Notes under the pieces: model-generated
Seen by the model: the letters and a program-made list of their open reading frames with translations, nothing else
Database searches by the model: none
Told to the model about the DNA's origin: nothing
Shown here: positions 18,243 to 64,000 of the stretch, in pieces
Layout: each line of letters starts with the position of its first letter
Numbering within the stretch: the stretch's first letter is position 1
Translations under genes and position numbers: made by a program
Assembly: GCA_051294905.1 (NCBI GenBank)
Contig: CM119383.1
Coordinates: 8,122,001 to 8,186,000, forward strand
DNA length: 64,000 nucleotides
Direction: 5' to 3'
From: Botryllus schlosseri
Taxonomy: Eukaryota

Positions 18243-18360
18243 ATGTCAAAACTCACTGCGGTGATAGCTGTAGCATCAGGTAGCTGCGATGTTGACGTTA
18301 TTGTTACTGCGTCGCATTTACGTCAATTGGGAATTGAGGTTCTTATTGCTTCTGTTGAAG
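18243..18360 (+). CDS. DJ-1-like gene exon 1
   Basis: MSKLTAVIAVASGSCDVDVIVTASHLRQLGIEVLIASVE|gtatgt. Confidence 0.8.
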
Positions 18361-21300
18361 GTATGTTATTAATACGTAATACTCAAAATAGGACCTGCAT
18401 TCGATCGAACTGATAAACAACTCGCTTTTTTTACACAGGATGGTCTCCGGTGACCCTGCGCAATGGCCTTGTAGTCAAACCACATTGCAGCGTTGACCGA
18501 CTGTTTTACTCTCGAGGCTCCAGGTGAAATTTCTTTGCTTGCGACCCAGGCAAATCACGAGTAAATACTCCTGCTGAGCTGAGACCCATCAGAATATCGC
18601 CGTGCCGTTTAATCTTGTTTGGGAACACAACTCCCTGGGTTTGCTTCAATGGCTTTGTCATATTTCATGTAGAGTAACGAAGTAGTCTACTTCTACTTTG
18701 TAGAGGTAGGCTACTCGAGTAGTTTCCTCTACTTGTAGAACTTACTCAAGTAAAAGTTATTTTCCGCTACTTCTACTTCGTAATATTTGGTTATTCGATG
18801 TTTGCTGTTCGTCAAGTAAAAGTATTATGCTTTTCAATGAGGGAGGGAGAGAGAGATGAAGAATGATAAATTTAGAGCTGTTTACTCGGAAAATCATCAA
18901 AAATTTAATTTTCACAAAAATGAAGTCCAGGATTTTTGTCGTGCTTTCGCGAAATAGATATCGAGTGACAAATCTGTTTTCACGGAAGTATCAATCAATA
19001 TATTTATGACGGGTAGTGTGTTTCATTTATAACCGCATTATTGCCACTCATATGACAGTTTCATCACAGTGAATAGGTAGCCTACCGTAATCTAGCAACG
19101 TATGGCGTGTGCCAAACTGAAAAAGTGGTCCTTGAATTTTGAGCGTTAGACTTTGTTTTGGCAGACCACCGTTGAAGCTTTCGGGACAAAATACCTTAAA
19201 TATATTTGTAATTAATATATACGTGGAATTGTTATGCTGTGGAAAATTCATACATCCTTGGATGTAGCAACACGAACGCAGCAGCTCACTTACAAGCTTT
19301 AGTCCATTAGAGTGCATTTATGAATACTTTTCGCAACTATTTGACTTACTTGAGCAGATTCAACGCCAGTCAATTCTACTTATACTTGACGTAGTTATCG
19401 GTTGCTTTTAAAAGCGCTATACTTCTACTCGTATTCGAGTAGATATTTGCGTCGATACTTCTACTTCTACGTGAGTAGCTTTATTGAATACTTTGACCGC
19501 GTTTGATTATATGTATAAAATACACAGATATAGAGCTGACTCTTCAGGGGATTTCGGTGCAAAGTTAGCATATATGCAGATTTTATTCCCATATTCTCTT
19601 AGCCCACTAAAGCCGATTCCGACCTGAGCTAAATTATAATCCCATTACGCTGGACGTCAACTCAAATCTTTTCATCTCTAGCTTACAGTCTACACAGTGC
19701 ACAGCCGCACACCCTTTGTATATGTCATATGGTGTCACTAAACATTTACGATAGTAACAGTATTATTGAGATATATTGTAGCATGATGTCATTACTTCAG
19801 CAGTATTGTAAAAGCAGCGACCAAATTATCAAGTTAGCAACGACGACCTTCAACATGCCCTACATATTTACAGAATATTGACTATACAATATGCGCGTCA
19901 TTTGCGATGCCCACACTGTAAAGAAATTCGCATTGGACTCAGTTCACATCTTATTAAGCTTGACCGTGGCCATGGCAAAACAGATCCATGAGACAGTTCA
20001 TTAACCCTGACAATTTTGTACTTGCAGGCCGTTTGATTTCCTGTTACTTCCAGACGGAGATGACATCAGCTACGGGCGGCTCCAAAGTCACCCGCAGTTG
20101 GCAGTTGCAGTCAGAAATCTCCTCGGCACGGAATCAACATCGAAGTCCGTAGAGCTCCATTCTAACGACATAACCCCCTGTATCGTTTTCGCCGGAATCA
20201 GCATCAAGCTACACCGTTACTGGTTACCGCACAATAAAAATTCGCGCATTCGCTCAATCAAAAACTGGTTCATATCGAAGGCAAGTGGGTCTCAGATAAT
20301 ATTGCAGGAACACGGCCAATCTGCCAATGCGGTTCTGTGTTGCGGCGCTTCGTCGGAAAATCCAGTTGAGACAGCTGATACATGCGCTAGCATTGCTCAC
20401 AAACTTATACAAAGCAAGGCGCGAAACGATATGAAAGCTAAGATGGGAAATTTGAAATCTTCCGCTATCCAGACCCGGATAAACCGTAACCGGCCAAAAC
20501 CGGTTGCGAGTCAACTGCGCTTGCTGACATACCTCCGAGACTGCGCCTGGATTCCGAGCGGTTTGCGGGCTTTTGTGCTTTCACCTGTATACTCGTTGTT
20601 TGCCGAAGAGAACAAACCCTCCACGTACTATCCCAGTGGTTTGTATCCCGGATTGTCGCTGGACGAAGGAGATCAGCTGAAGAAGGTTCACTTTGATCGA
20701 ACTAGTCTTGGAATCGGATCAAAATCCGCTGCTTGCGTTATCGAAAAGATCAAGCGTTTCATCGGCAAGTCGCTGGATCTTGATAGAAGGTGAGCTAGCT
20801 TTTTGCCTTTACCTTGCAGGGATAAAGTTCGATTATCATTCACAACCTGCAGCTCAGCTGCACGCCTGGTGGCTATCCAACGTCCATATAGCCCTTTCGC
20901 ACCAGATCCATCCAATTCAATTCTGTTAATTAAATTCTTTAAAATGTAAAAATTAGGTGATCCACGGACTTTGTGACGACACATTACCAGAGATTCTTGT
21001 CTGTTGTAATCAAGTGCTGATCATCAAAAATGGTTACTGCGGTTATTACCGACAATAGAATAATAATTTCATTTGTTGAGATTTTAATCGCAAAATTATA
21101 TATTACAATCAAGGGAAACGGAACACACCTTATAAATATAGCCAGAGTAGCCGAGCTCAATAGATTTACAATCGATTCTGAACGAAATTTCAGACCACTG
21201 CCAATGTGCAGTGCGGCAATACTAGTGTGCAACAGAGTCGACGAACAATTACTAGCAGTCCTCGTCCACTCTCTGAGCGCCAAGTTCAAACTGATGACCC

Positions 21301-23230
21301 ACGTGATCGCCTGCGACCGCGCTTTACTTCAAACGAGAGATCCTTTCGTAATTACTCGCGGAATGCTGCAGATAAGAGCCGACAACAATATTGAAACGTC
21401 AGTAAACATTGCTGTTTAATGCTGTACTGCAAGCGTATAAGTTTTAGGCGACCTTTTATCGATGTCATATGTTCGTCACAGAGCAAAACCGTGCTACGAC
21501 GTGGTTATAGCGATTGACAGTGAAGTGGTGGGAGGCGGTCCTGGCATTTGGTATAGAAAGAGCACGTTTGATTATGGAGATTTTGAGATCATACGGAAAG
21601 GCAAACTGCCCCCGCACGTCTCGTGTGTAGCCGCCAAATTCGATGCAGGGGATAAATGCGCTGGGATCATGCAATCTGTCACTGACAAAAGACTCAATCC
21701 TCTGACCAACGAGTGGATTAGGCTGGAGACTAGTTCAGGTCAGTAATATGACCGAGTAGTATTTCATCGCCGCAGCCGCACTCGATGCGTCACAGTATTT
21801 ATCAGGGGCGGGCAGACCTGCTTCATGCGCAAACCGCATATGAAAAATCTTAGTCTCAAAAGAACCATAACACAAAAATTCAAACGTACGAATTTTTTCC
21901 GTCGCAATGAAATTTAGGCTATCGAATTCAGTTTATTATTGTGTGGTGATACGGCTACAAAGTGTTTGAAATCAGGCGGATATGACATCAAAGCAGTGCG
22001 GAGCAGTTCCTTCAAATTCCACTGAGCATTCAAGGTAGATTTCAGCTCGGTAGTCTTACTAACTCCTTAAATCTGTCTTCGTTGGGTAACTAGTGGAAAA
22101 TTTTTGGTGTTTGGTTCAAGCATTAAAGCAATAGCCCACTTTCATTCTAGGCTTTTATAAAACATCACTCATGCGGATCGGATAACAACGAGAAGTCTAT
22201 TGATAATTCTCCAATACCTAGGTTTCGGGATTCTGGAGTAGACCACGACCGAGCTTAAAACTGGCGGGCGATTGATGTTGCAGCAACGTTGCCTGCCACT
22301 ACGCTATACTCGCCACAATCGGCCGCTTTATTTTATTCTGTAGCGACATCGCGTTTTCATTGATGTTCCAGGACATTTACGGTGATACCCCTCTTAAAAT
22401 CCAGTAGCTTTCAAACAAACCAAACTTGTCTATTCAGGTGTGCTATCTAATAGCCCTAAGATTATTATTCCGCAGCAATGTGCCTTTATCTTTATAGTTC
22501 ATATAAAATTACCTTCTGTCGATATGCAATATATATACCAGCCGTCTTCCATAAAAAAGACGAAACGGGAAGCATTTGGACTTTGGATACACTTTGCATT
22601 AATATTAAACAATCGACTACGGCTGTGTGTCGCTACGAAATGAATCGATGGGCTTTTCTTATTTCGCTACAACTTTTCATCATTGTTATTCCTGTTTCCT
22701 ACTTGGCAATTTCTCACATAGTTCGTCTTTGCTAGTATCAACAAATGTAAGCGTATGATTCTGCAAAATTGTGGTCATTGTGCCATTCAAAAGTTTAGGG
22801 TCCAAAATCTTGATCGGATTATTTTAAAGAGGTCTGAAAAAACCGCTGTCTTCATACATTCGTCTGGCACTATTTCGGCACGAATGCATAGCGCTTGGTA
22901 CACTTGACCCTCGTTTCAACTTCTCTACCCCTTTCAGATACTGGCATTGAAAAGAAGACCCCAGACACCACATTTTTCGATGTTTGTCACGACATTGGGC
23001 GATCAAAGACCGGATTGTGGAAAGCAGACAACAGTCACAGTCTGCTATTCCAAACGTTTCGCTCGTTTCACTCAGGATCCGCTTTGCATACCTCTGTTTC
23101 GAGCAGATCGAGTGCTCACGACGCCATGGACTTCTCGCGAGCAGTAACCGACTGTCTGCGCAAACTAATGATGAAAAATGGCCAGCAGTTGGAATCTGTG
23201 CCGCAGTATTCCAGATGCGTAGTTATGTAG
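18243..23230 (+). CDS. Divergent tandem two-domain DJ-1/PfpI-superfamily (PARK7-like) protein, 6 exons, 572 aa
   Basis: Exons 18243-18360, 18439-18523, 20028-20789, 21194-21397, 21482-21738, 22938-23230; all GT-AG, phases 1,2,2,2,1, 1719 nt open. Domain 1: KLTAVIAVASGSCDVDVIV..GIEVLIASVEGWSPVTLRNGLVVKPHCSV..PFDFLLLPDG. Domain 2: AAILVCNRVDEQLL..DPFVITRGMLQIRADNNIE..PCYDVVIAI..TSVSSRSSAHDAMDFSRAVTDCL. Both parallel DJ-1 (KRALVILAKGAEEME..DPVQCSRDVVICPDASL..PYDVVVLPGG..TSRGPGTSFEFALAIVEAL). The family call is by eye. Confidence 0.75.
18439..18523 (+). CDS. DJ-1-like gene exon 2
   Basis: ttacacag|GWSPVTLRNGLVVKPHCSVDRLFYSRGS|gtgaaa. Confidence 0.78.
20028..20789 (+). CDS. DJ-1-like gene exon 3 (rest of domain 1 plus linker)
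   Basis: cttgcag|RPFDFLLLPDGDDISYGRL.. continues through the supplied ORF 20098-20793 to DLDR ag|gtgagc. Confidence 0.8.
21194..21397 (+). CDS. DJ-1-like gene exon 4 (start of domain 2)
   Basis: tttcag|RPLPMCSAAILVCNRVDEQLLAVLVHSL..RADNNIE|gtcagt. Confidence 0.78.
21482..21738 (+). CDS. DJ-1-like gene exon 5
   Basis: cacag|TAKPCYDVVIAIDSEVVGGG..WIRLETSS|gtcagt. Confidence 0.78.
22938..23230 (+). CDS. DJ-1-like gene terminal exon
   Basis: ctttcag|DTGIEKKTPD..LHTSVSSRSSAHDAMDFSRAVTDCLRK..CVVM*. Confidence 0.75.
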
Positions 23231-59413: not shown

Positions 59414-60613
59414 GGCTGCCCATCCAACAAGTCGCTGCTGAAGAGATTCGGCGTCCTAAACATAGAAGATACGCGGAAACTAGAAATCGCCAAGTTTGTG
59501 TATCAGTTCCACTGCGGTCGTTGCCCCGAATATTTCAATGACTTCTTTACCTCGGAATCAAAAGCGCACAAGTACAACACACGCGCGTCCACGTTGTCCA
59601 AATATCATATGATCGACCGAAAAGATCATCGCTCTATCAAATATGCCGGACCTGATGTGTGGAACCATTGTGTCCTATATGGTGTCGACACAAGCAAATC
59701 TCACGCCTCAGTGAAATTGTATCACGTCACAATTTCCATTTGGCTACAGGCAATTTGACGGTCATTTTTGACCGGCTTGCCGAGCATTAAATTTGATAAA
59801 ACGGGTATCAATCGAAAGCTGACTCTGCACTGATTACGAAAATATAAATTTTATTCCGCTCGTGACCCTGGAACTCCGGCAATCAGCCTCGAATTTTTCA
59901 TTGTTATGGAGATTGGCATTGGGACGCAACGATGCTGTCTGGCGAAACGAGAGAGTAGCTCAAGAGAAAAAGAGCTAGACAGCATTGTTGCGTCCCAATG
60001 CCAATCTCCATAACAATGAAAAATTCGAGGCTGATTGTGGGAGTTCCAGAGCCACGAGCGGAATAAAATTTATATTTTCGTAATCAGTGCAGAGTCAGCT
60101 TTCGTTTGATACCCGTTTTATCAAATTTAATGCTCGGCAAGCCGGTCAAAAATGACCGTCAAATTGCCTGTAGCCAAATGGAAATTGTGACGTGATACAA
60201 TTTCACTGAGGCGTGAGATTTGCTTGTGTCGACACCATATAGGACACTATGGTGAAACAGTATCCCGACGGCCATCCGACAGTCGACGAGCATGTCCACA
60301 TTCAAGTCGAAATACAAGCAATTACTTCTAAATAAATACAGTCCATCCTCAAGATTACCGGACCACGACTGACCTATCGATCTCGCTTCTCATGACATGC
60401 CGCTAGATTTCTTGTCGTTTTTTTTCTATACTATCTTCTTTACCTTCATTCAGTGTGCATGCCTCCTCTTTACTTCGCCTAGGCCAAGGTGGGTGTCTGA
60501 TTCCATAGACTACTCCAAGTCGCTTCGACATCTTCCTGTCTTTTCATTGTATCGCATTTTTTGTGGTGTGTTGAACTGATCAAATTGCTGATATACCAAT
60601 GATGATGATGATG
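59414..60613 (+). mobile_element. 5'-truncated CR1/L2-type LINE (ORF2 C-terminus, 3' UTR, (GAT)n tail), split by a palindromic DNA element
   Basis: LLKRFGVLNIEDTRKLEIAKFVY..HKYNTR..SIKYAGPDVWN, continued after the insert as SIPTAIRQSTSMSTFKSKYKQLLLNKY; (GAT)n at about 60598-60613. Confidence 0.85.
59666..60251. mobile_element. 586-bp near-perfect palindromic MITE with 7-bp TSD (P-superfamily/Galileo-like)
   Basis: Arms 59666-59942 and 59975-60251 are reverse complements with few mismatches and a 32-bp spacer; ends CATTGTGTCCTATA/TATAGGACACTATG; flanks GTGGAAC/GTGAAAC. Confidence 0.88.
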
Positions 60614-61056
60614 AGTTTTGTCAATTTTATAATTTAGATTTTATAATTTAGAAAACACCACAAGACTGTGATACAATGACAGACATATGTTCAAGTACAG
60701 ACGGAGCCGACTTATTTATTCATTAAATCGCAATCTTGTGGTGTTTTAATCTGATTAAAAATGTTCAAAAATTGATTGACTGAACTGACTGCGCTCATGT
60801 GTAAAGTACGAACCGCAAACTCCAAGTTTATGCAGAATCGTCACGGTACACTGCACTGCAGGTACATTGTTTGTATTCGATGGTCACGTTAGGAGATGCT
60901 TCATGCATCGCCGACTATTCGCCGTCTCGCCGTTATTTGTGTTCAGTGCGAATGTTCTGCAATTCCTCGTAACCCACTCTGTTATTGACTATTTCTATTG
61001 CGGTACCGGCAACATAATAACCTTTATTTCAGTAACAGTTTATAGCTAAAAGAAAG

Positions 61057-61095
61057 ATGCTACGAAGTGCACTTCACCGATGCTTACTCGTGGAG
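61057..61095 (+). CDS. AhpD-like gene putative exon 1 (leader)
   Basis: MLRSALHRCLLVE|gttagt; phase 0 fits the next exon. Confidence 0.6.
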
Positions 61096-63747
61096 GTTAG
61101 TCAAGTTCACTTCCTCCATCAAATCAATAACATGATCAATTCATTTACGACATACCGGTATGATTTCGCGGTTTGCTCTGTTTCCGGCGATCTATTTTTT
61201 ATAATTCACTAAAAGTGAAGTGATGCTGTTCATTTTTTATGTATGCATATGTTTTGATTTTTATTTTTACAGCGATGCACAACAAGACTACCTGGGTTAT
61301 CAACACGCAGGCAACAGTCTGATGCAAGCTCGTTGTATGAGACACCAAATGTAAGCATATGCTTTGCAGACCCGTTGCTATTGGGTTTGAAAATTACCAG
61401 GCAGTAAAGCCTGATATCTCACTCGTTATCTCTAGTTTTATATCATGTTATGTTACTGTCATGAGTACATGATTATATTGATTTGTAGTGAGTTGAGAAA
61501 TTGTTTTTTTCCGGATACCAAAGAGATTTATAATTATATCAATTGACCTCTGTTCCATTTTAAAGGTGAAACAGCTACCAGTTCAGGTACAAAAAAGACT
61601 TCACAAAGCCGAGGACGTTCATGGATTTATACCAAATTTTCTACATATGTACAGCAGAAGACCAAAGGAATTTTCTGCATTTTTTGAGTATCACGACACT
61701 GTAATGTCAGAAGGTAAGGCTGTGTGTTAATGACTTTAATGACGAGGATCAGAAGTCCTAAAACCATGTGTACTTGAGATCACAAAAATCAAACTGTGCG
61801 GTTTATGACTTTTCCAATTATTTTCAAAGTAGATAAAAGACCAATTAGTGTCCCGGAGTGTGGATGCTTCAAAGCTGAATTTACATATAACTCATGACCG
61901 GCAATGTTAGGTTGTTAGGTAACTCATAGTGGAGGGGAGGACTTTGATGTGGGCAGTGTTAGAACTTTTATATTAGTTTTGGTAAATGGTTGGTGATTAG
62001 GGCTGGGCAAATTCGAGTACCTGAGTGATTCGATTCTGAATCACGTAATATGCTTCGAGTCGAGTCGAGTATTAGAGTATCACTCATTATGACGTCATAA
62101 CAGAATGTAATATGTCAAAGTTCAAATAAGTACCTCTTATGCCAACACAAAGAACACGATGCCCGTTAGCCATCACATTAACGATACTTAGTATTTTTCG
62201 ACCATGCCGATTTCATTGAACTTTGTGACAATGTTGTGGGATAATCATGCCTTCGCAAATGTGATATTTCTAGTAACGTTCGTGGCGTTGTACAAGTACT
62301 TTATACCCTGCTTTGTATGCTGCGGTACGGCCAATCAAGGTTTCATGTCTGCCAAAGTGAAAAATAGTATTGAAGCTATAATTTTTGTTGATGAATTAAC
62401 TTTCAGTGGCGAAGAGCGTATAATTTCAGTACTCGAAAAATTCGTCTTTTACTACTCGACTCGAATCATGAAAATAAATACTCGATTCAGATTCGAGTAC
62501 TCGAATCATTGTGCCCAGCCCTATTGGTGATTGAATGGTGTTTTTGCATAGTAGAATTATAATGTAGCTCAAAGCAGCTCTCTGAAGAGAACCAATGTTA
62601 CACCTTGTGGATGCACGTAATCATCCATATTCCCTCTCCAATGCCTTCACTCTGTCAACCTGGCAAAATGTATCATATAACGTTAACTTTCAAAATATAA
62701 TATTATACACTAATGAATTGGTTTGCAATAGTCTTGTTAAGCAACCGAGTGTGTCAATTTCAGTTATGTTCAACTTCAACGTTGCAAAATTCATGAAAGG
62801 GCTTATGGCAAGCTATGAATGTGGTGTTCAATATGTACCATGTCACTTTCACCACTCTCACCTGCTTCGGTCAAATATGTCATTGCCCTGCACCTGCAGT
62901 CTATCAAATTAATCTATGTCCTGAATGCTGGGGTCATTCACTGAACTCTTGCCAGATCACACATACAATTATTTATTTCGTCAACATATTGCAGAACGGG
63001 GAAATTTAACTAGAACGGAAAAGGAGATGATAGCCTTGGTCACGAGTGCGAAACAAGGCTGTGTTTACTGCGCTGTAGCGCACAGCGGATTGTTAAAGAA
63101 GTATTCTGATGACGCTGTCCACCCTGAAGAGGTAACACAGTCATATTTCACAGTTTGCAGTAATATTCTGAAACAACCCTTTAAAAACACTAGCCACAAT
63201 TTGTCTTAACACTTCATTGTGATTGATTTAGCCCTTTTCACTGTGATTGCTGATACCGCAAGTCGTGAAGTGTTGAAAACATGATCAGAACATACAATAA
63301 ATAGCTTTTCAGTTTTCACTGTTCATAGAAAACACATCAAACAATGGAATCTCTGCAAACAACACAAATTTGTACTACCACACTAAATATATACACATTG
63401 GCATGATAAGTTCAATGAAACCAGACACTGGACAATGTACAATACTAGACTGCATAAAATGATTCAGGTTTTAAAATCACCTATTGCCATTTCAGCTGGT
63501 CATCAACTGGCAACAGGCTGACATCACGGATCGCCAAAAGGCAATTCTATCGTTCGCAACAGGCATAACCCACGGAAAGCGTGCCTCTAAAGATGATTTT
63601 GAAAAACTCGCGGCACATGGATTAGATTCAGAGGACGCGTGGGATATCATAGCTGTTATGGGGTTGACCACCATGACGGGTTACATGGCTATCTTGACGG
63701 ATGTACAGCCCAACGAGCAGTTTCATAAAATGGCTAGACGTAAATAG
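61057..63747 (+). CDS. AhpD/carboxymuconolactone-decarboxylase-family peroxidase-related protein with putative mitochondrial leader, 5 exons, 217 aa
   Basis: Exons 61057-61095, 61273-61350, 61566-61713, 62995-63131, 63496-63747 (654 nt, phases 0,0,1,0). GFIPNF..RRPKEFSAFFEYHD..M, LTRTEKEMIALVTS..GCVYCAVAH and INWQQADITDRQKAILSFA..EDAWDI..VQPNEQF match the bacterial uncharacterised peroxidase-related AhpD family. The first two exons are less certain. Confidence 0.87.
61273..61350 (+). CDS. AhpD-like gene exon 2
   Basis: tttttacag|RCTTRLPGLSTRRQQSDASSLYETPN|gtaagc. Confidence 0.72.
61566..61713 (+). CDS. AhpD-like gene exon 3
   Basis: VKQLPVQVQKRLHKAEDVHGFIPNFLHMYSRRPKEFSAFFEYHDTVMSE|gtaagg. 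Confidence 0.88.
61998..62523. mobile_element. hAT-like MITE in AhpD-like gene intron
   Basis: TIR TAGGGCTGGGCA..TGCCCAGCCCTA; perfect 8-bp TSD TTGGTGAT (61990-61997, 62524-62531); a related left end occurs at about 9226. Confidence 0.88.
62995..63131 (+). CDS. AhpD-like gene exon 4 (CxxCxxxH site)
   Basis: ERGNLTRTEKEMIALVTSAKQGCVYCAVAHSGLLKKYSDDAVHPEE|gtaaca. Confidence 0.9.
63496..63747 (+). CDS. AhpD-like gene terminal exon
   Basis: tttcag|LVINWQQADITDRQKAILSFA..DVQPNEQFHKMARRK*. Confidence 0.9.
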   Translation: MVINWQQADITDRQKAILSFATGITHGKRASKDDFEKLAAHGLDSEDAWDIIAVMGLTTMTGYMAILTDVQPNEQFHKMARRK

Positions 63748-64000
63748 GAACTAGTTTTAATACGTTTGGGTACAATTCAACTAATCTCAATTGTCATCGT
63801 CAGTGAGAAGATGCGGAGGAGGTGGAACTGGTGGGCCTCTGCACGCATCTCACCCCGTCTTTCAACATTGGAGTTCCCTGGTCCCGACCTGGTACACAAC
63901 GATACACTCTAGTTTCCACAAGTTACACAAATGAGAAGATATTGCGCTTTGACTACTGGGAGCAAGCTGTTATTTAATAATTATGCCCTTTACTTGCATA

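What the first reader, a model, noticed from the sequence alone, without database searches (positions are those of the whole stretch)
61057..63747. Bacterial-type AhpD peroxidase-related gene with spliceosomal introns and a mitochondrial-type leader
Seen: a 217-aa spliced ORF with GFIPNF, EFSAFFEYHD, LTRTEKEMI..CVYCAVAH and ADITDRQKAIL. The first ~35 aa (MLRSALHRCLLVERCTTRLPGLSTRRQQ) are Arg/Leu/Ser/Thr-rich with almost no acidic residues and sit on two separate small exons. Known: AhpD/CMD proteins use a Glu..CxxC..His relay (M. tuberculosis AhpD E118/C130/C133/H137), this subfamily is mainly bacterial, and vertebrates have only the distantly related sestrin domain. Inference: a horizontally acquired or patchily retained gene, domesticated by intron gain and addition of a targeting peptide, that could give this animal a mitochondrial thiol-redox activity vertebrates lack.
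Basis: partly seen in the sequence, partly recalled or inferred. Interest (0 to 1): 0.7.

Follow-up and report, generated by a model that had tools for sequence, protein, structure and literature searches.

The report
Divergent sea-squirt AhpD-like redox gene
This is a real, expressed five-exon animal gene for a bacterial-looking thiol-redox (AhpD-like, CxxC) protein with a probable mitochondrial leader. It was not recently acquired from bacteria: it is a fast-evolving sea-squirt duplicate of an old, unstudied gene found from corals to birds.

Summary
Five GT..AG-bounded exons (61057-63747, + strand) give a 217-aa protein. All quoted motifs are present, and all four splice junctions, including those joining the two small leader exons to the domain, are seen in RNA from independent studies.

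The family is not confined to bacteria, and vertebrates do not lack it. Orthologues ("uncharacterized protein", si:ch211-175m2.5) occur in cnidarians, molluscs, a brachiopod, an annelid, echinoderms, hemichordates, amphioxus, sharks, fishes, amphibians, reptiles and birds. A few mammals carry copies with a degenerate CxxC.

One intron position and phase is shared exactly by all eight genes mapped. A second is shared, to within two codons, by seven of them. The basic N-terminal extension is a trait of the whole animal clade.

The genome holds a second, canonical copy about 70 kb away. In the tree the window gene groups with Styela clava LOC120339374 (54% identity) and then with that canonical copy. 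It is therefore a tunicate-specific, rapidly evolving paralogue.

It keeps the Glu-x11-Cys-x2-Cys-x3-His relay but has lost several family-invariant residues. Mitochondrial targeting and thiol-reductase activity are inferred, not shown. The scan had not noted this gene on other DNA.

The parts
61015..61056 (+). 5' UTR (minimum extent)
   Evidence: Transcript contig 8 of run X4 starts at 61015. X22 raw reads also cover 60900-61001, so the true start may lie further upstream. There is no ATG between 61015 and 61056.
61057..61095 (+). Exon 1: start codon and the first 13 aa of the leader
   Evidence: ATG at 61057 with A at -3, and a GT donor at 61096. Junction to 61273 is seen in the X4 contig and in 5 X22 reads.
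61273..61350 (+). Exon 2: rest of the leader (aa 14-33) and the first residues of the conserved domain (aa 34-39)
   Evidence: AG acceptor and GT donor. Junction 61350/61566 is seen in the X4 contig only. Aa 33-39 align with the family's N-terminal S-R-F-P-x-P motif, here degenerate.
61566..61713 (+). Exon 3: N-terminal helices, including GFIPNF and EFSAFFEYHD
   Evidence: TIGR01926 profile positions 10-55. Phase-1 donor. Junction to 62995 is seen in X1, X4 and 7 X22 reads.
61993..62525 (.). Dispersed ~527-bp repeat inserted in intron 3 (not part of the coding gene)
   Evidence: Very high read and contig depth. More than 5000 first-look candidates in the genome, with copies 87-99% identical on many contigs.
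62995..63131 (+). Exon 4: active-site exon. Glu99 at 63024-63026, Cys111 at 63060-63062, Cys114 at 63069-63071, His118 at 63081-63083
   Evidence: TIGR00778 AhpD core (41.1 bits) and PF02627 (31.8 bits). The residues were read directly from the sequence.
63132..63495 (+). Intron 4 (phase 0). Its position is conserved in all animal orthologues examined, and it is frequently retained in RNA
   Evidence: Spliced in an X1 contig and in 6 X22 reads. Retained in the X4 contig, in X1 record 5, and at a depth comparable to the exons in X22. Retention would end the frame at 63207-63209. The position is shared by all 8 genes mapped.
63496..63747 (+). Exon 5: C-terminal half of the domain plus the stop codon
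   Evidence: TIGR01926 positions 104-177. PDB 2PRR at E 4.7e-12.
63748..63890 (+). 3' UTR (minimum extent)
   Evidence: Contigs of X1 and X4 run to 63890.

Best explanation
The stretch is a functional, transcribed nuclear gene of a tunicate (sea squirt). It encodes a 217-aa protein of the 'peroxidase-related enzyme' branch (TIGR01926) of the AhpD/carboxymuconolactone-decarboxylase superfamily.

Shown:
- It is one of two copies in this genome. The other, about 70 kb away on the opposite strand, is the slowly evolving canonical orthologue of a gene present across Cnidaria and Bilateria.
- The window gene belongs to a fast-evolving, tunicate-specific duplicate lineage that also includes Styela clava LOC120339374.
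- The gene entered the animal lineage, or was inherited by it, before cnidarians and bilaterians split. Its introns and its N-terminal extension are ancestral family traits, not local innovations.

Inferred:
- The 32-aa basic extension is a mitochondrial presequence that is cleaved on import.
- The mature all-helical domain probably forms an oligomer, as its bacterial homologues do in crystals.
- It acts as a CxxC thiol-disulfide oxidoreductase through the retained Glu99 / Cys111 / Cys114 / His118 relay. It would reduce a peroxiredoxin-type peroxidase or a small oxidised substrate, with reducing power from a matrix dithiol donor such as dihydrolipoamide or thioredoxin.
- Loss of several family-invariant residues suggests that its substrate or partner differs from that of the canonical copy.
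For: Gene and expression.

Family: TIGR01926, TIGR00778 and PF02627. The nearest solved structure is 2PRR. An AlphaFold model of the Styela orthologue has pLDDT above 90 over residues 45-228. It matches 2PRR at TM 0.93 and rmsd 1.2 A, and its first 40 residues are unstructured.

Two loci in the genome.

Animal distribution.

Trees:
- Animals plus both own copies against the 40 closest bacteria: 96/98.
- Window gene + Styela clava: 100/90.
- Adding transcript fragment P0013: 100/99.
- Adding the own canonical copy: 97/86.
- Holding the window-type clade with bacteria costs 12.8 lnL, p-AU 0.037.

Introns:
- The phase-0 intron after the A-D-Q column lies in the same alignment column in all 8 genes. 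These are a frog, a fish, a sea urchin, Lingula, Haliotis, Mytilus and both own copies.
- A phase-1 intron lies within 2 codons in 7 of 8.
- The two own copies share a private phase-0 intron.

A further window-type exon 5 lies on metagenome contigs, with the acceptor at the same codon.

Catalytic spacing E-x11-C-x2-C-x3-H is kept. 43 of 65 highly conserved columns are kept, against 58 of 65 in the canonical copy.

Leaders: animal members carry 18-64 aa extensions that are nearly all net positive. Bacteria have a median of 6 aa before the same column.

Function of a related bacterial member: deletion of DR_1765 (PDB 6K40) sensitises Deinococcus to H2O2, and rescue depends on the CxxC (PMC8945050, citing Zhao et al. 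2020).
Against: - No targeting predictor or localisation experiment was available. 'Mitochondrial' rests on composition only: net +4, 6 Arg/Lys against 2 acidic residues, a moderate hydrophobic moment of 0.52, and the clade-wide presence of such extensions.
- No member of the animal clade has been studied. Five library searches for the family or its names found no paper on it.
- The window gene has lost residues invariant in the family: Asn two before the first Cys, Arg123, Asp133, the S-N-R motif and the N-terminal S-R-F-P motif. Its activity may therefore be altered or reduced.
- Its branch is very long: 2.92 against a median of 0.22, and 1.47. Before the Styela sequence was added, AU tests could not fix its place. 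The final AU p of 0.037 is only a marginal rejection.
- Depth over the leader exons is 3-5 times lower than over exons 4-5, and intron 4 is often retained. A sizeable share of transcripts may therefore encode something else.
- The tunicate identity of the genome comes from other agents' notes and from the Styela best hit. I did not verify it independently.
Confidence: 0.72

Rival explanations
1. One reading: a bacterial AhpD-type gene acquired horizontally by this animal or its near ancestors. It was then domesticated by intron gain and addition of a targeting peptide, giving an activity that vertebrates lack.
For: Bacterial homologues are very similar: 50-58% identity to the canonical animal proteins and up to 44% to the window gene. 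Before the Styela sequence was added, AU tests could not exclude the window gene lying just outside the animal clade (p 0.52 and 0.24).
Against: Orthologues occur in Cnidaria, Mollusca, Brachiopoda, Annelida, Echinodermata, Hemichordata, Cephalochordata and all vertebrate classes. Intron positions and phases are shared with frog, fish, mollusc and brachiopod genes. Leaders are present across the animal clade. The gene is sister to a canonical copy in the same genome (97/86). Grouping it with bacteria is rejected at p 0.037.
Confidence: 0.03
2. Ancient transfer: the whole animal family descends from one bacterium-to-animal transfer into the stem of Eumetazoa (or earlier in Holozoa). The alternative is descent from the mitochondrial endosymbiont or the eukaryotic ancestor. 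This rival concerns the origin only and is compatible with the best explanation.
For: Identity to marine proteobacterial proteins such as those of Thalassobius and Magnetovibrionaceae is unusually high, at about 50-58%. The bacteria form one clan that attaches next to the cnidarians. No fungal, plant or protist protein appeared among the named top hits of three searches.
Against: Only the best 120 hits of each search are listed, so other eukaryotes were not searched for systematically. Sponges, ctenophores and choanoflagellates were not examined. The tree is unrooted, so the direction of any transfer is not established.
Confidence: 0.35
3. The window gene is a redundant duplicate under relaxed constraint: an expressed relic on its way to loss, with no distinct function.
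For: The branch is 6-13 times the median. 22 of 65 near-invariant family columns are changed, including the S-N-R motif. Retention of intron 4 is frequent and truncates the frame. Five of the 9 listed exonic variants change the amino acid.
Against: The open frame is intact across five exons with canonical splice sites. The catalytic Glu/Cys/Cys/His are kept. Derived motifs are conserved with Styela clava and two further sources: Y-x-x-P-N-V-K-Q-L-P, G-F-I-P-N-F-L, A-H-S-G and T-T-M-T-x-x-M. Against the metagenome orthologue dN is 0.35 while synonymous sites are saturated. A rough pN/pS is about 0.35. The intron carries far more variants than the exons.
Confidence: 0.1
4. The N-terminal extension is not a mitochondrial presequence. 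The protein is cytosolic or goes elsewhere, and the extension is a linker or regulatory tail.
For: No predictor could be run. The hydrophobic moment (0.52) is at the low end of the animal set. There is one acidic residue at position 13. No clean R-2 or R-3 cleavage motif was found by eye.
Against: Extensions with the same character (basic, Ser/Thr-rich, nearly acid-free, variable in sequence and length, unstructured in the model) precede the domain in nearly all animal members and are absent from bacterial ones. There is no hydrophobic core typical of a signal peptide and no C-terminal peroxisomal tripeptide.
Confidence: 0.25

Closest known systems
Styela clava LOC120339374 (uncharacterized protein, 228 aa; P0402)
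   Same: It is the best full-length match: 54% identity over 181 aa, and sister to the window gene in the tree (100/90). It shares the derived motifs and a basic leader, here 44 aa long. The AlphaFold model of its domain is confident.
   Different: It is less diverged: end branch 0.34 against 1.47. Its gene structure could not be fetched.
Canonical animal family annotated 'si:ch211-175m2.5' or 'carboxymuconolactone decarboxylase-like domain-containing protein', including the second copy in this genome at contig C13:8110605-8112900 (minus strand)
   Same: Same domain, same CxxC relay, an N-terminal basic extension and shared intron positions.
   Different: The window gene is only about 40% identical to it. 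It has replaced the invariant N-x-C, R, D and S-N-R residues and the S-R-F-P-V-P motif. The canonical members evolve slowly: 56-67% identity between the sea-squirt copy and echinoderm, hemichordate or fish proteins.
Bacterial TIGR01926 'peroxidase-related enzymes' with solved structures (2PRR, 2PFX, 2OYO, 3C1L) and Deinococcus radiodurans DR_1765 (6K40)
   Same: Same subfamily profile and fold: TM 0.87-0.94 for the Styela orthologue model. Same CxxC motif. DR_1765 protects against H2O2 in a CxxC-dependent way (PMC8945050).
   Different: The bacterial proteins have no N-terminal extension and no introns. Apart from DR_1765 they are structural-genomics entries without known partners.
Mycobacterium tuberculosis AhpD (1KNC, 1GU9)
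   Same: Same superfamily and the same Glu-x11-Cys-x2-Cys-x3-His spacing.
   Different: Only a distant structural match (Foldseek E about 0.3, TM about 0.5, 10-12% identity). No hit to the classical AhpD model was reported. AhpC reduction through lipoamide is therefore an analogy, not a membership.
Sestrins (PA26, PF04636)
   Same: A distant AhpD-like helical fold. Weak PA26 Pfam hits are recorded for some family members.
   Different: Sestrins are 480-aa two-lobed cytosolic proteins. The structural match is weak (E 0.3-0.5). This is a different family.

Membership tests
TIGR01926 peroxidase-related enzyme (AhpD/CMD superfamily) | Full-length collinear match to the 178-position profile above the 81.8-bit cut-off | tested here: met
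   Exons 3, 4 and 5 match positions 10-55, 59-99 and 104-177 with 24.2 + 45.9 + 40.1 = 110 bits. The spliced protein itself could not be submitted, so this is a sum over pieces.
AhpD core domain (TIGR00778) / Pfam CMD (PF02627) | Domain score above the curated cut-off | tested here: met
   Exon 4 scores 41.1 bits against 27.8, and 31.8 bits against 23.
AhpD-like thiol oxidoreductases | Glu-x11-Cys-x2-Cys-x3-His proton-relay and redox motif | tested here: met
   Glu99, Cys111, Cys114 and His118 were read from the spliced translation and lie in the family's invariant columns.
TIGR01926 / animal clade | Other invariant residues of the clade: Asn two residues before the first Cys, Arg five after the His, Asp of the A-D-Q motif, S-N-R in the last long helix, and the N-terminal S-R-F-P-x-P | tested here: not met
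   The window gene has Gln109, Lys123, Glu133, T-G-Y at 195-197 and S-L-Y-E-T-P at 33-38. It keeps 43 of 65 conserved columns, against 58 of 65 in the canonical copy. It is a divergent member, not a typical one.
TIGR01926 fold | All-helical AhpD-core fold superposable on 2PRR | tested here: met
   Tested by proxy. The AlphaFold model of the Styela orthologue (54% identical) has mean pLDDT 86 and matches 2PRR at TM 0.93, rmsd 1.2 A. The window protein itself was not folded, because a spliced sequence has no reference.
Classical AhpD (M. tuberculosis type) | Close sequence or structural similarity to 1KNC/1GU9, and partnership with AhpC and lipoamide | tested here: not met
   The Foldseek match is only E 0.3 with 10-12% identity. 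The partnership cannot be tested with these tools.
Nuclear-encoded mitochondrial matrix proteins | Cleavable N-terminal presequence: basic, amphipathic, acid-poor, absent from bacterial homologues | tested here: inconclusive
   The extension is 32 aa with net charge +4 and 7 Ser/Thr. It is absent from bacteria and present across animal members, and it is unstructured in the orthologue model. No TargetP or MitoFates run and no localisation data were available.
Recent bacterium-to-animal horizontal transfer | Nested within bacteria, absent from related animals, and with introns and leader not shared with other animals | tested here: not met
   The distribution among animals is broad, the introns are shared, the animals form one clan, and AU p is 0.037 against a bacterial grouping.

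The most novel reading that the evidence does not exclude
Animals from corals to birds carry an unstudied, probably mitochondrial AhpD-like CxxC reductase. It would be a thiol-redox component missing from the mammalian textbook picture; the few mammalian copies seen have a degenerate CxxC. Tunicates duplicated the gene and remodelled one copy, keeping the catalytic relay but rewriting the conserved surface motifs, which suggests a new substrate or partner.
Probability: 0.35. Interest if true: 0.55.

Novelty: new member of a known kind. Interest (0 to 1): 0.3.

Why it matters
The horizontal-transfer story does not hold, so the finding does not bear on gene transfer into animals.

What remains is modest but real. 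A conserved eumetazoan gene family with a bacterial-type AhpD/CxxC domain and a presequence-like leader has no experimental characterisation in the library searched. It appears to be decaying in mammals. It may add an unrecognised reductase to mitochondrial peroxide or disulfide metabolism in most other animals.

The sea-squirt pair offers a natural comparison. One copy is conserved. The other evolves fast but keeps its catalytic residues. Comparing them could show which residues set partner specificity.

Tried and rejected
I worked exon by exon, in local scripts, and through the Styela orthologue P0402.
- AU tests on the first tree did not discriminate (p 0.52 and 0.24), because the window gene was a lone long branch. 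Adding the Styela and fragment sequences resolved this.
- dN/dS against the metagenome orthologue failed: synonymous sites are saturated.
- The gene structure of the Styela orthologue is not on record.
- The first alignment for the window-type profile misplaced exon 4 and was discarded.
- Literature searches for the zebrafish gene name, TIGR01926, AhpD-like plus HGT, and CMD in animals found nothing on the animal family.
- A bacterial promoter/terminator scan of the 3' end is irrelevant to a eukaryotic gene and was ignored.
- The first exon of the canonical paralogue could not be fixed without RNA data, and the reads tool was already used. That model therefore starts at its second exon.
- A signal-peptide reading of the leader was rejected for lack of a hydrophobic core. 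A peroxisomal reading was rejected for lack of a C-terminal PTS1.
Full report
**1. Observation.**

Reading window 60500-64000 and splicing 61057-61095, 61273-61350, 61566-61713, 62995-63131 and 63496-63747 gives a 654-nt frame of 217 codons plus a stop. All four introns are GT..AG.

The three domain exons hit NCBIfam TIGR01926 ('peroxidase-related enzyme') collinearly at profile positions 10-55, 59-99 and 104-177. The summed score is 110 bits against a cut-off of 81.8. Exon 4 alone passes the AhpD-core model TIGR00778 and Pfam CMD.

**2. Expression.**

I laid two sets of transcriptome contigs and two raw RNA-seq runs of the same species on 60900-63950.

- All four junctions appear at exactly the predicted bases.
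- One 1197-nt contig (run X4) starts at 61015 and joins the 5' UTR, exons 1, 2, 3 and 4. Raw reads of X22 cross junctions 1, 3 and 4. So the leader exons are transcribed and spliced onto the domain in at least two independent studies.
- Caveat: junction 2 is seen only in the contig.
- Caveat: depth over exons 1-3 is several-fold lower than over exons 4-5. This could be 3' bias, allelic divergence under the 95% likeness filter, or some downstream starts.
- Caveat: intron 4 is retained in the X4 contig, in one X1 contig and at exon-like depth in X22. Retention would stop the frame at 63207-63209, giving a protein that lacks the C-terminal half.

**3. The family is not confined to bacteria.**

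An exhaustive search with exon 5, followed by cluster look-ups and three word-index searches, found named orthologues in many animal groups:

- Cnidaria: Acropora, Montipora, Porites, Orbicella, Actinia.
- Mollusca: many bivalves, gastropods and a chiton.
- Brachiopoda (Lingula) and Annelida (Owenia).
- Echinodermata: sea stars, a sea urchin, crinoids, a sea cucumber.
- Hemichordata: Saccoglossus, Ptychodera, Glandiceps.
- Branchiostoma.
- Vertebrates: elephant shark, coelacanth, bichir, gar, sturgeon, dozens of teleosts (gene name si:ch211-175m2.5), frogs, caecilians, lizards, snakes, turtles, crocodilians and birds.
- A few mammals: star-nosed mole, opossum, dolphin, sand rat, woodchuck.

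All are annotated only as uncharacterised or 'CMD-like domain-containing'. Five searches of the paper library found nothing on this animal family.

**4. A second copy, and what the window gene is.**

A six-frame search of the whole assembly with TIGR01926 finds two loci only. One is the window gene. The other is at C13:8110605-8112519 on the minus strand, about 70 kb upstream and just outside the window.

I spliced that copy from its second exon onward. It is 56-67% identical to echinoderm, hemichordate, Lingula and fish proteins, so it is the canonical orthologue. The window gene is only 40% identical to it and at most 45% identical to any canonical animal or bacterial protein.

A profile built from window-type pieces (A3) found Styela clava LOC120339374, which is 54% identical over 181 aa. 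It shares the window gene's derived motifs and has a 44-aa basic leader. Further window-type pieces are:

- a 133-aa transcript fragment (P0013);
- a 73-aa piece (P0012);
- an exon-5 ORF on two metagenome contigs, whose acceptor site lies at the same codon as in the window.

Other agents' notes call this genome a sea squirt. The Styela hit is consistent with that.

**5. Phylogeny.**

With 27 animal and 40 closest bacterial sequences, animals plus both own copies form one side of a branch with 96/98 support. However, the window gene is a very long branch (2.92 against a median of 0.22). AU tests on that tree could not exclude a position just outside the animals.

I then added the Styela orthologue, the fragment and more phyla:

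- window gene + Styela: 100/90;
- adding P0013: 100/99;
- adding the canonical copy of this genome: 97/86;
- 29 bacteria form a single clan (100/98) that attaches beside the cnidarians, roughly as a species tree rooted on bacteria would predict.

Forcing the window-type clade to join the bacteria costs 12.8 log-likelihood units (p-AU 0.037). One JGI 'metagenome' protein that I had labelled bacterial (P0445) falls among the gastropods and is probably mollusc DNA.

**6. Introns.**

I mapped exact exon structures for Haliotis, Mytilus, Lingula, Diadema, a frog and a sea bass from their genomic loci.

- The phase-0 intron after the A-D-Q column is in the same alignment column in all eight genes, including both copies here.
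- A phase-1 intron just before the N-L-T-K motif is present in seven of eight. It keeps the same phase, within two codons, in a loop that has indels.
- Six of six outside genes have a phase-0 intron before G-F-L-P-N-V. The two sea-squirt copies lack it and share a private phase-0 intron 18 codons upstream.
- Most genes also have a phase-0 intron inside the leader.

This evidence is independent of the protein tree. The exon-intron structure was already in place in the bilaterian ancestor, and the duplication happened in the tunicate lineage after its own intron change.

**7. Leader.**

Measured up to the conserved Ser column, animal members carry extensions of 18-64 aa. These are basic, Ser/Thr-rich and nearly acid-free but unrelated in sequence. 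Bacteria have a median of 6 aa.

The window gene's extension is 32 aa, with 6 Arg/Lys, 2 acidic residues and net charge +4. In the AlphaFold model of the Styela orthologue, the first 40 residues have pLDDT below 50 while the domain exceeds 90.

This is the pattern expected of a mitochondrial presequence inherited by the whole clade. No predictor or localisation data were available, so it stays an inference.

**8. Active site and divergence.**

The window protein keeps Glu99, Cys111, Cys114 and His118 with the E-x11-C-x2-C-x3-H spacing of AhpD. It has changed 22 of 65 columns that are at least 85% conserved in the family, including five that are invariant:

- Asn109 to Gln;
- Arg123 to Lys;
- Asp133 to Glu;
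- Asn196-Arg197 to Gly-Tyr.

The N-terminal S-R-F-P-V-P motif is also degenerate. The canonical copy keeps 58 of 65.

Several of the new residues are shared with the Styela and metagenome orthologues. dN to the latter is 0.35 with saturated synonymous sites. The intron carries many more variants than the exons. Of the nine exonic variants listed, four are silent. The gene therefore looks constrained in a new state rather than decaying.

**9. Structure and function.**

The nearest solved structures are structural-genomics entries of the same subfamily: 2PRR, then 2OYO, 3C1L, 2PFX and 6K40. M. tuberculosis AhpD and the sestrins are only remote matches (E about 0.3).

The one studied relative, Deinococcus DR_1765 (6K40), protects against H2O2 in a CxxC-dependent way (PMC8945050).

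By analogy, the animal proteins are most likely matrix thiol-disulfide oxidoreductases that feed a peroxidase or reduce an oxidised small molecule. The donor and acceptor are unknown.

**10. Verdict.**

The HGT/domestication reading is refuted, and 'patchily retained' is what survives. The gene is a divergent tunicate paralogue of an old, annotated but unstudied animal family.

Whether the family entered animals by an ancient transfer or is older was not resolved. Non-animal eukaryotes were not searched systematically.

Noticed in passing
window 61993-62525 (inside intron 3): A ~527-bp dispersed repeat. The genome holds more than 5000 first-look candidates, with copies 87-99% identical on many contigs. 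RNA contig and read depth over it is very high, and there are short inverted repeats near its ends. It looks like a recently active non-autonomous element.
   Followed up: partly
window 63132-63495 (intron 4): Intron 4 is retained in transcripts of three studies, at a depth close to the flanking exons in the raw-read run, whereas introns 1-3 have no unique coverage. Retention adds 25 codons and a stop at 63207-63209. That would give a protein with the CxxC but without the C-terminal half. It may be regulated retention or slow splicing.
   Followed up: partly
G000:C13:8110605-8112900, minus strand (loci L001, L002, L005), about 10 kb before the window start: The canonical copy of the same family. 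It is 56-67% identical to echinoderm, hemichordate and fish orthologues and shares three intron positions with the window gene. Its first exon and its expression were not determined.
   Followed up: partly
proteins P0408 (Condylura), P0443 (Psammomys), P0476 (Marmota): The mammalian homologues that surfaced have a degenerate active site: C-L-Y-N in two and S-L-Y-H in one, instead of C-x-Y-C. This suggests loss of redox function or pseudogenisation in mammals.
   Followed up: no
protein P0002 / P0152 (Biomphalaria glabrata and B. pfeifferi, 384 aa): A snail paralogue fuses two BED-type zinc fingers to the N-terminus of the CMD domain in place of the leader. Its second Cys is also replaced (C-K-Y-F).
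   Followed up: no
protein P0445 (JGI metagenome, 223 aa): This protein is labelled a bacterial 'peroxidase-related enzyme' but groups with the gastropods Biomphalaria and Elysia at 100/99 support. It is probably mollusc DNA in a metagenome.
   Followed up: no
window 63890-63895 (3' UTR): 26 raw reads diverge from the reference right after 63890 into an unrelated, consistent sequence. A 2-nt deletion at 63894 is seen in 14 of 22 reads. This may be a structural haplotype difference or a further splice in the 3' UTR.
   Followed up: no
window 18243-23230: Another first-stage note places a tandem double DJ-1/PfpI-fold gene between the two AhpD-like copies. Two redox-related gene families thus lie in one 75-kb neighbourhood. 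I did not examine it.
   Followed up: no
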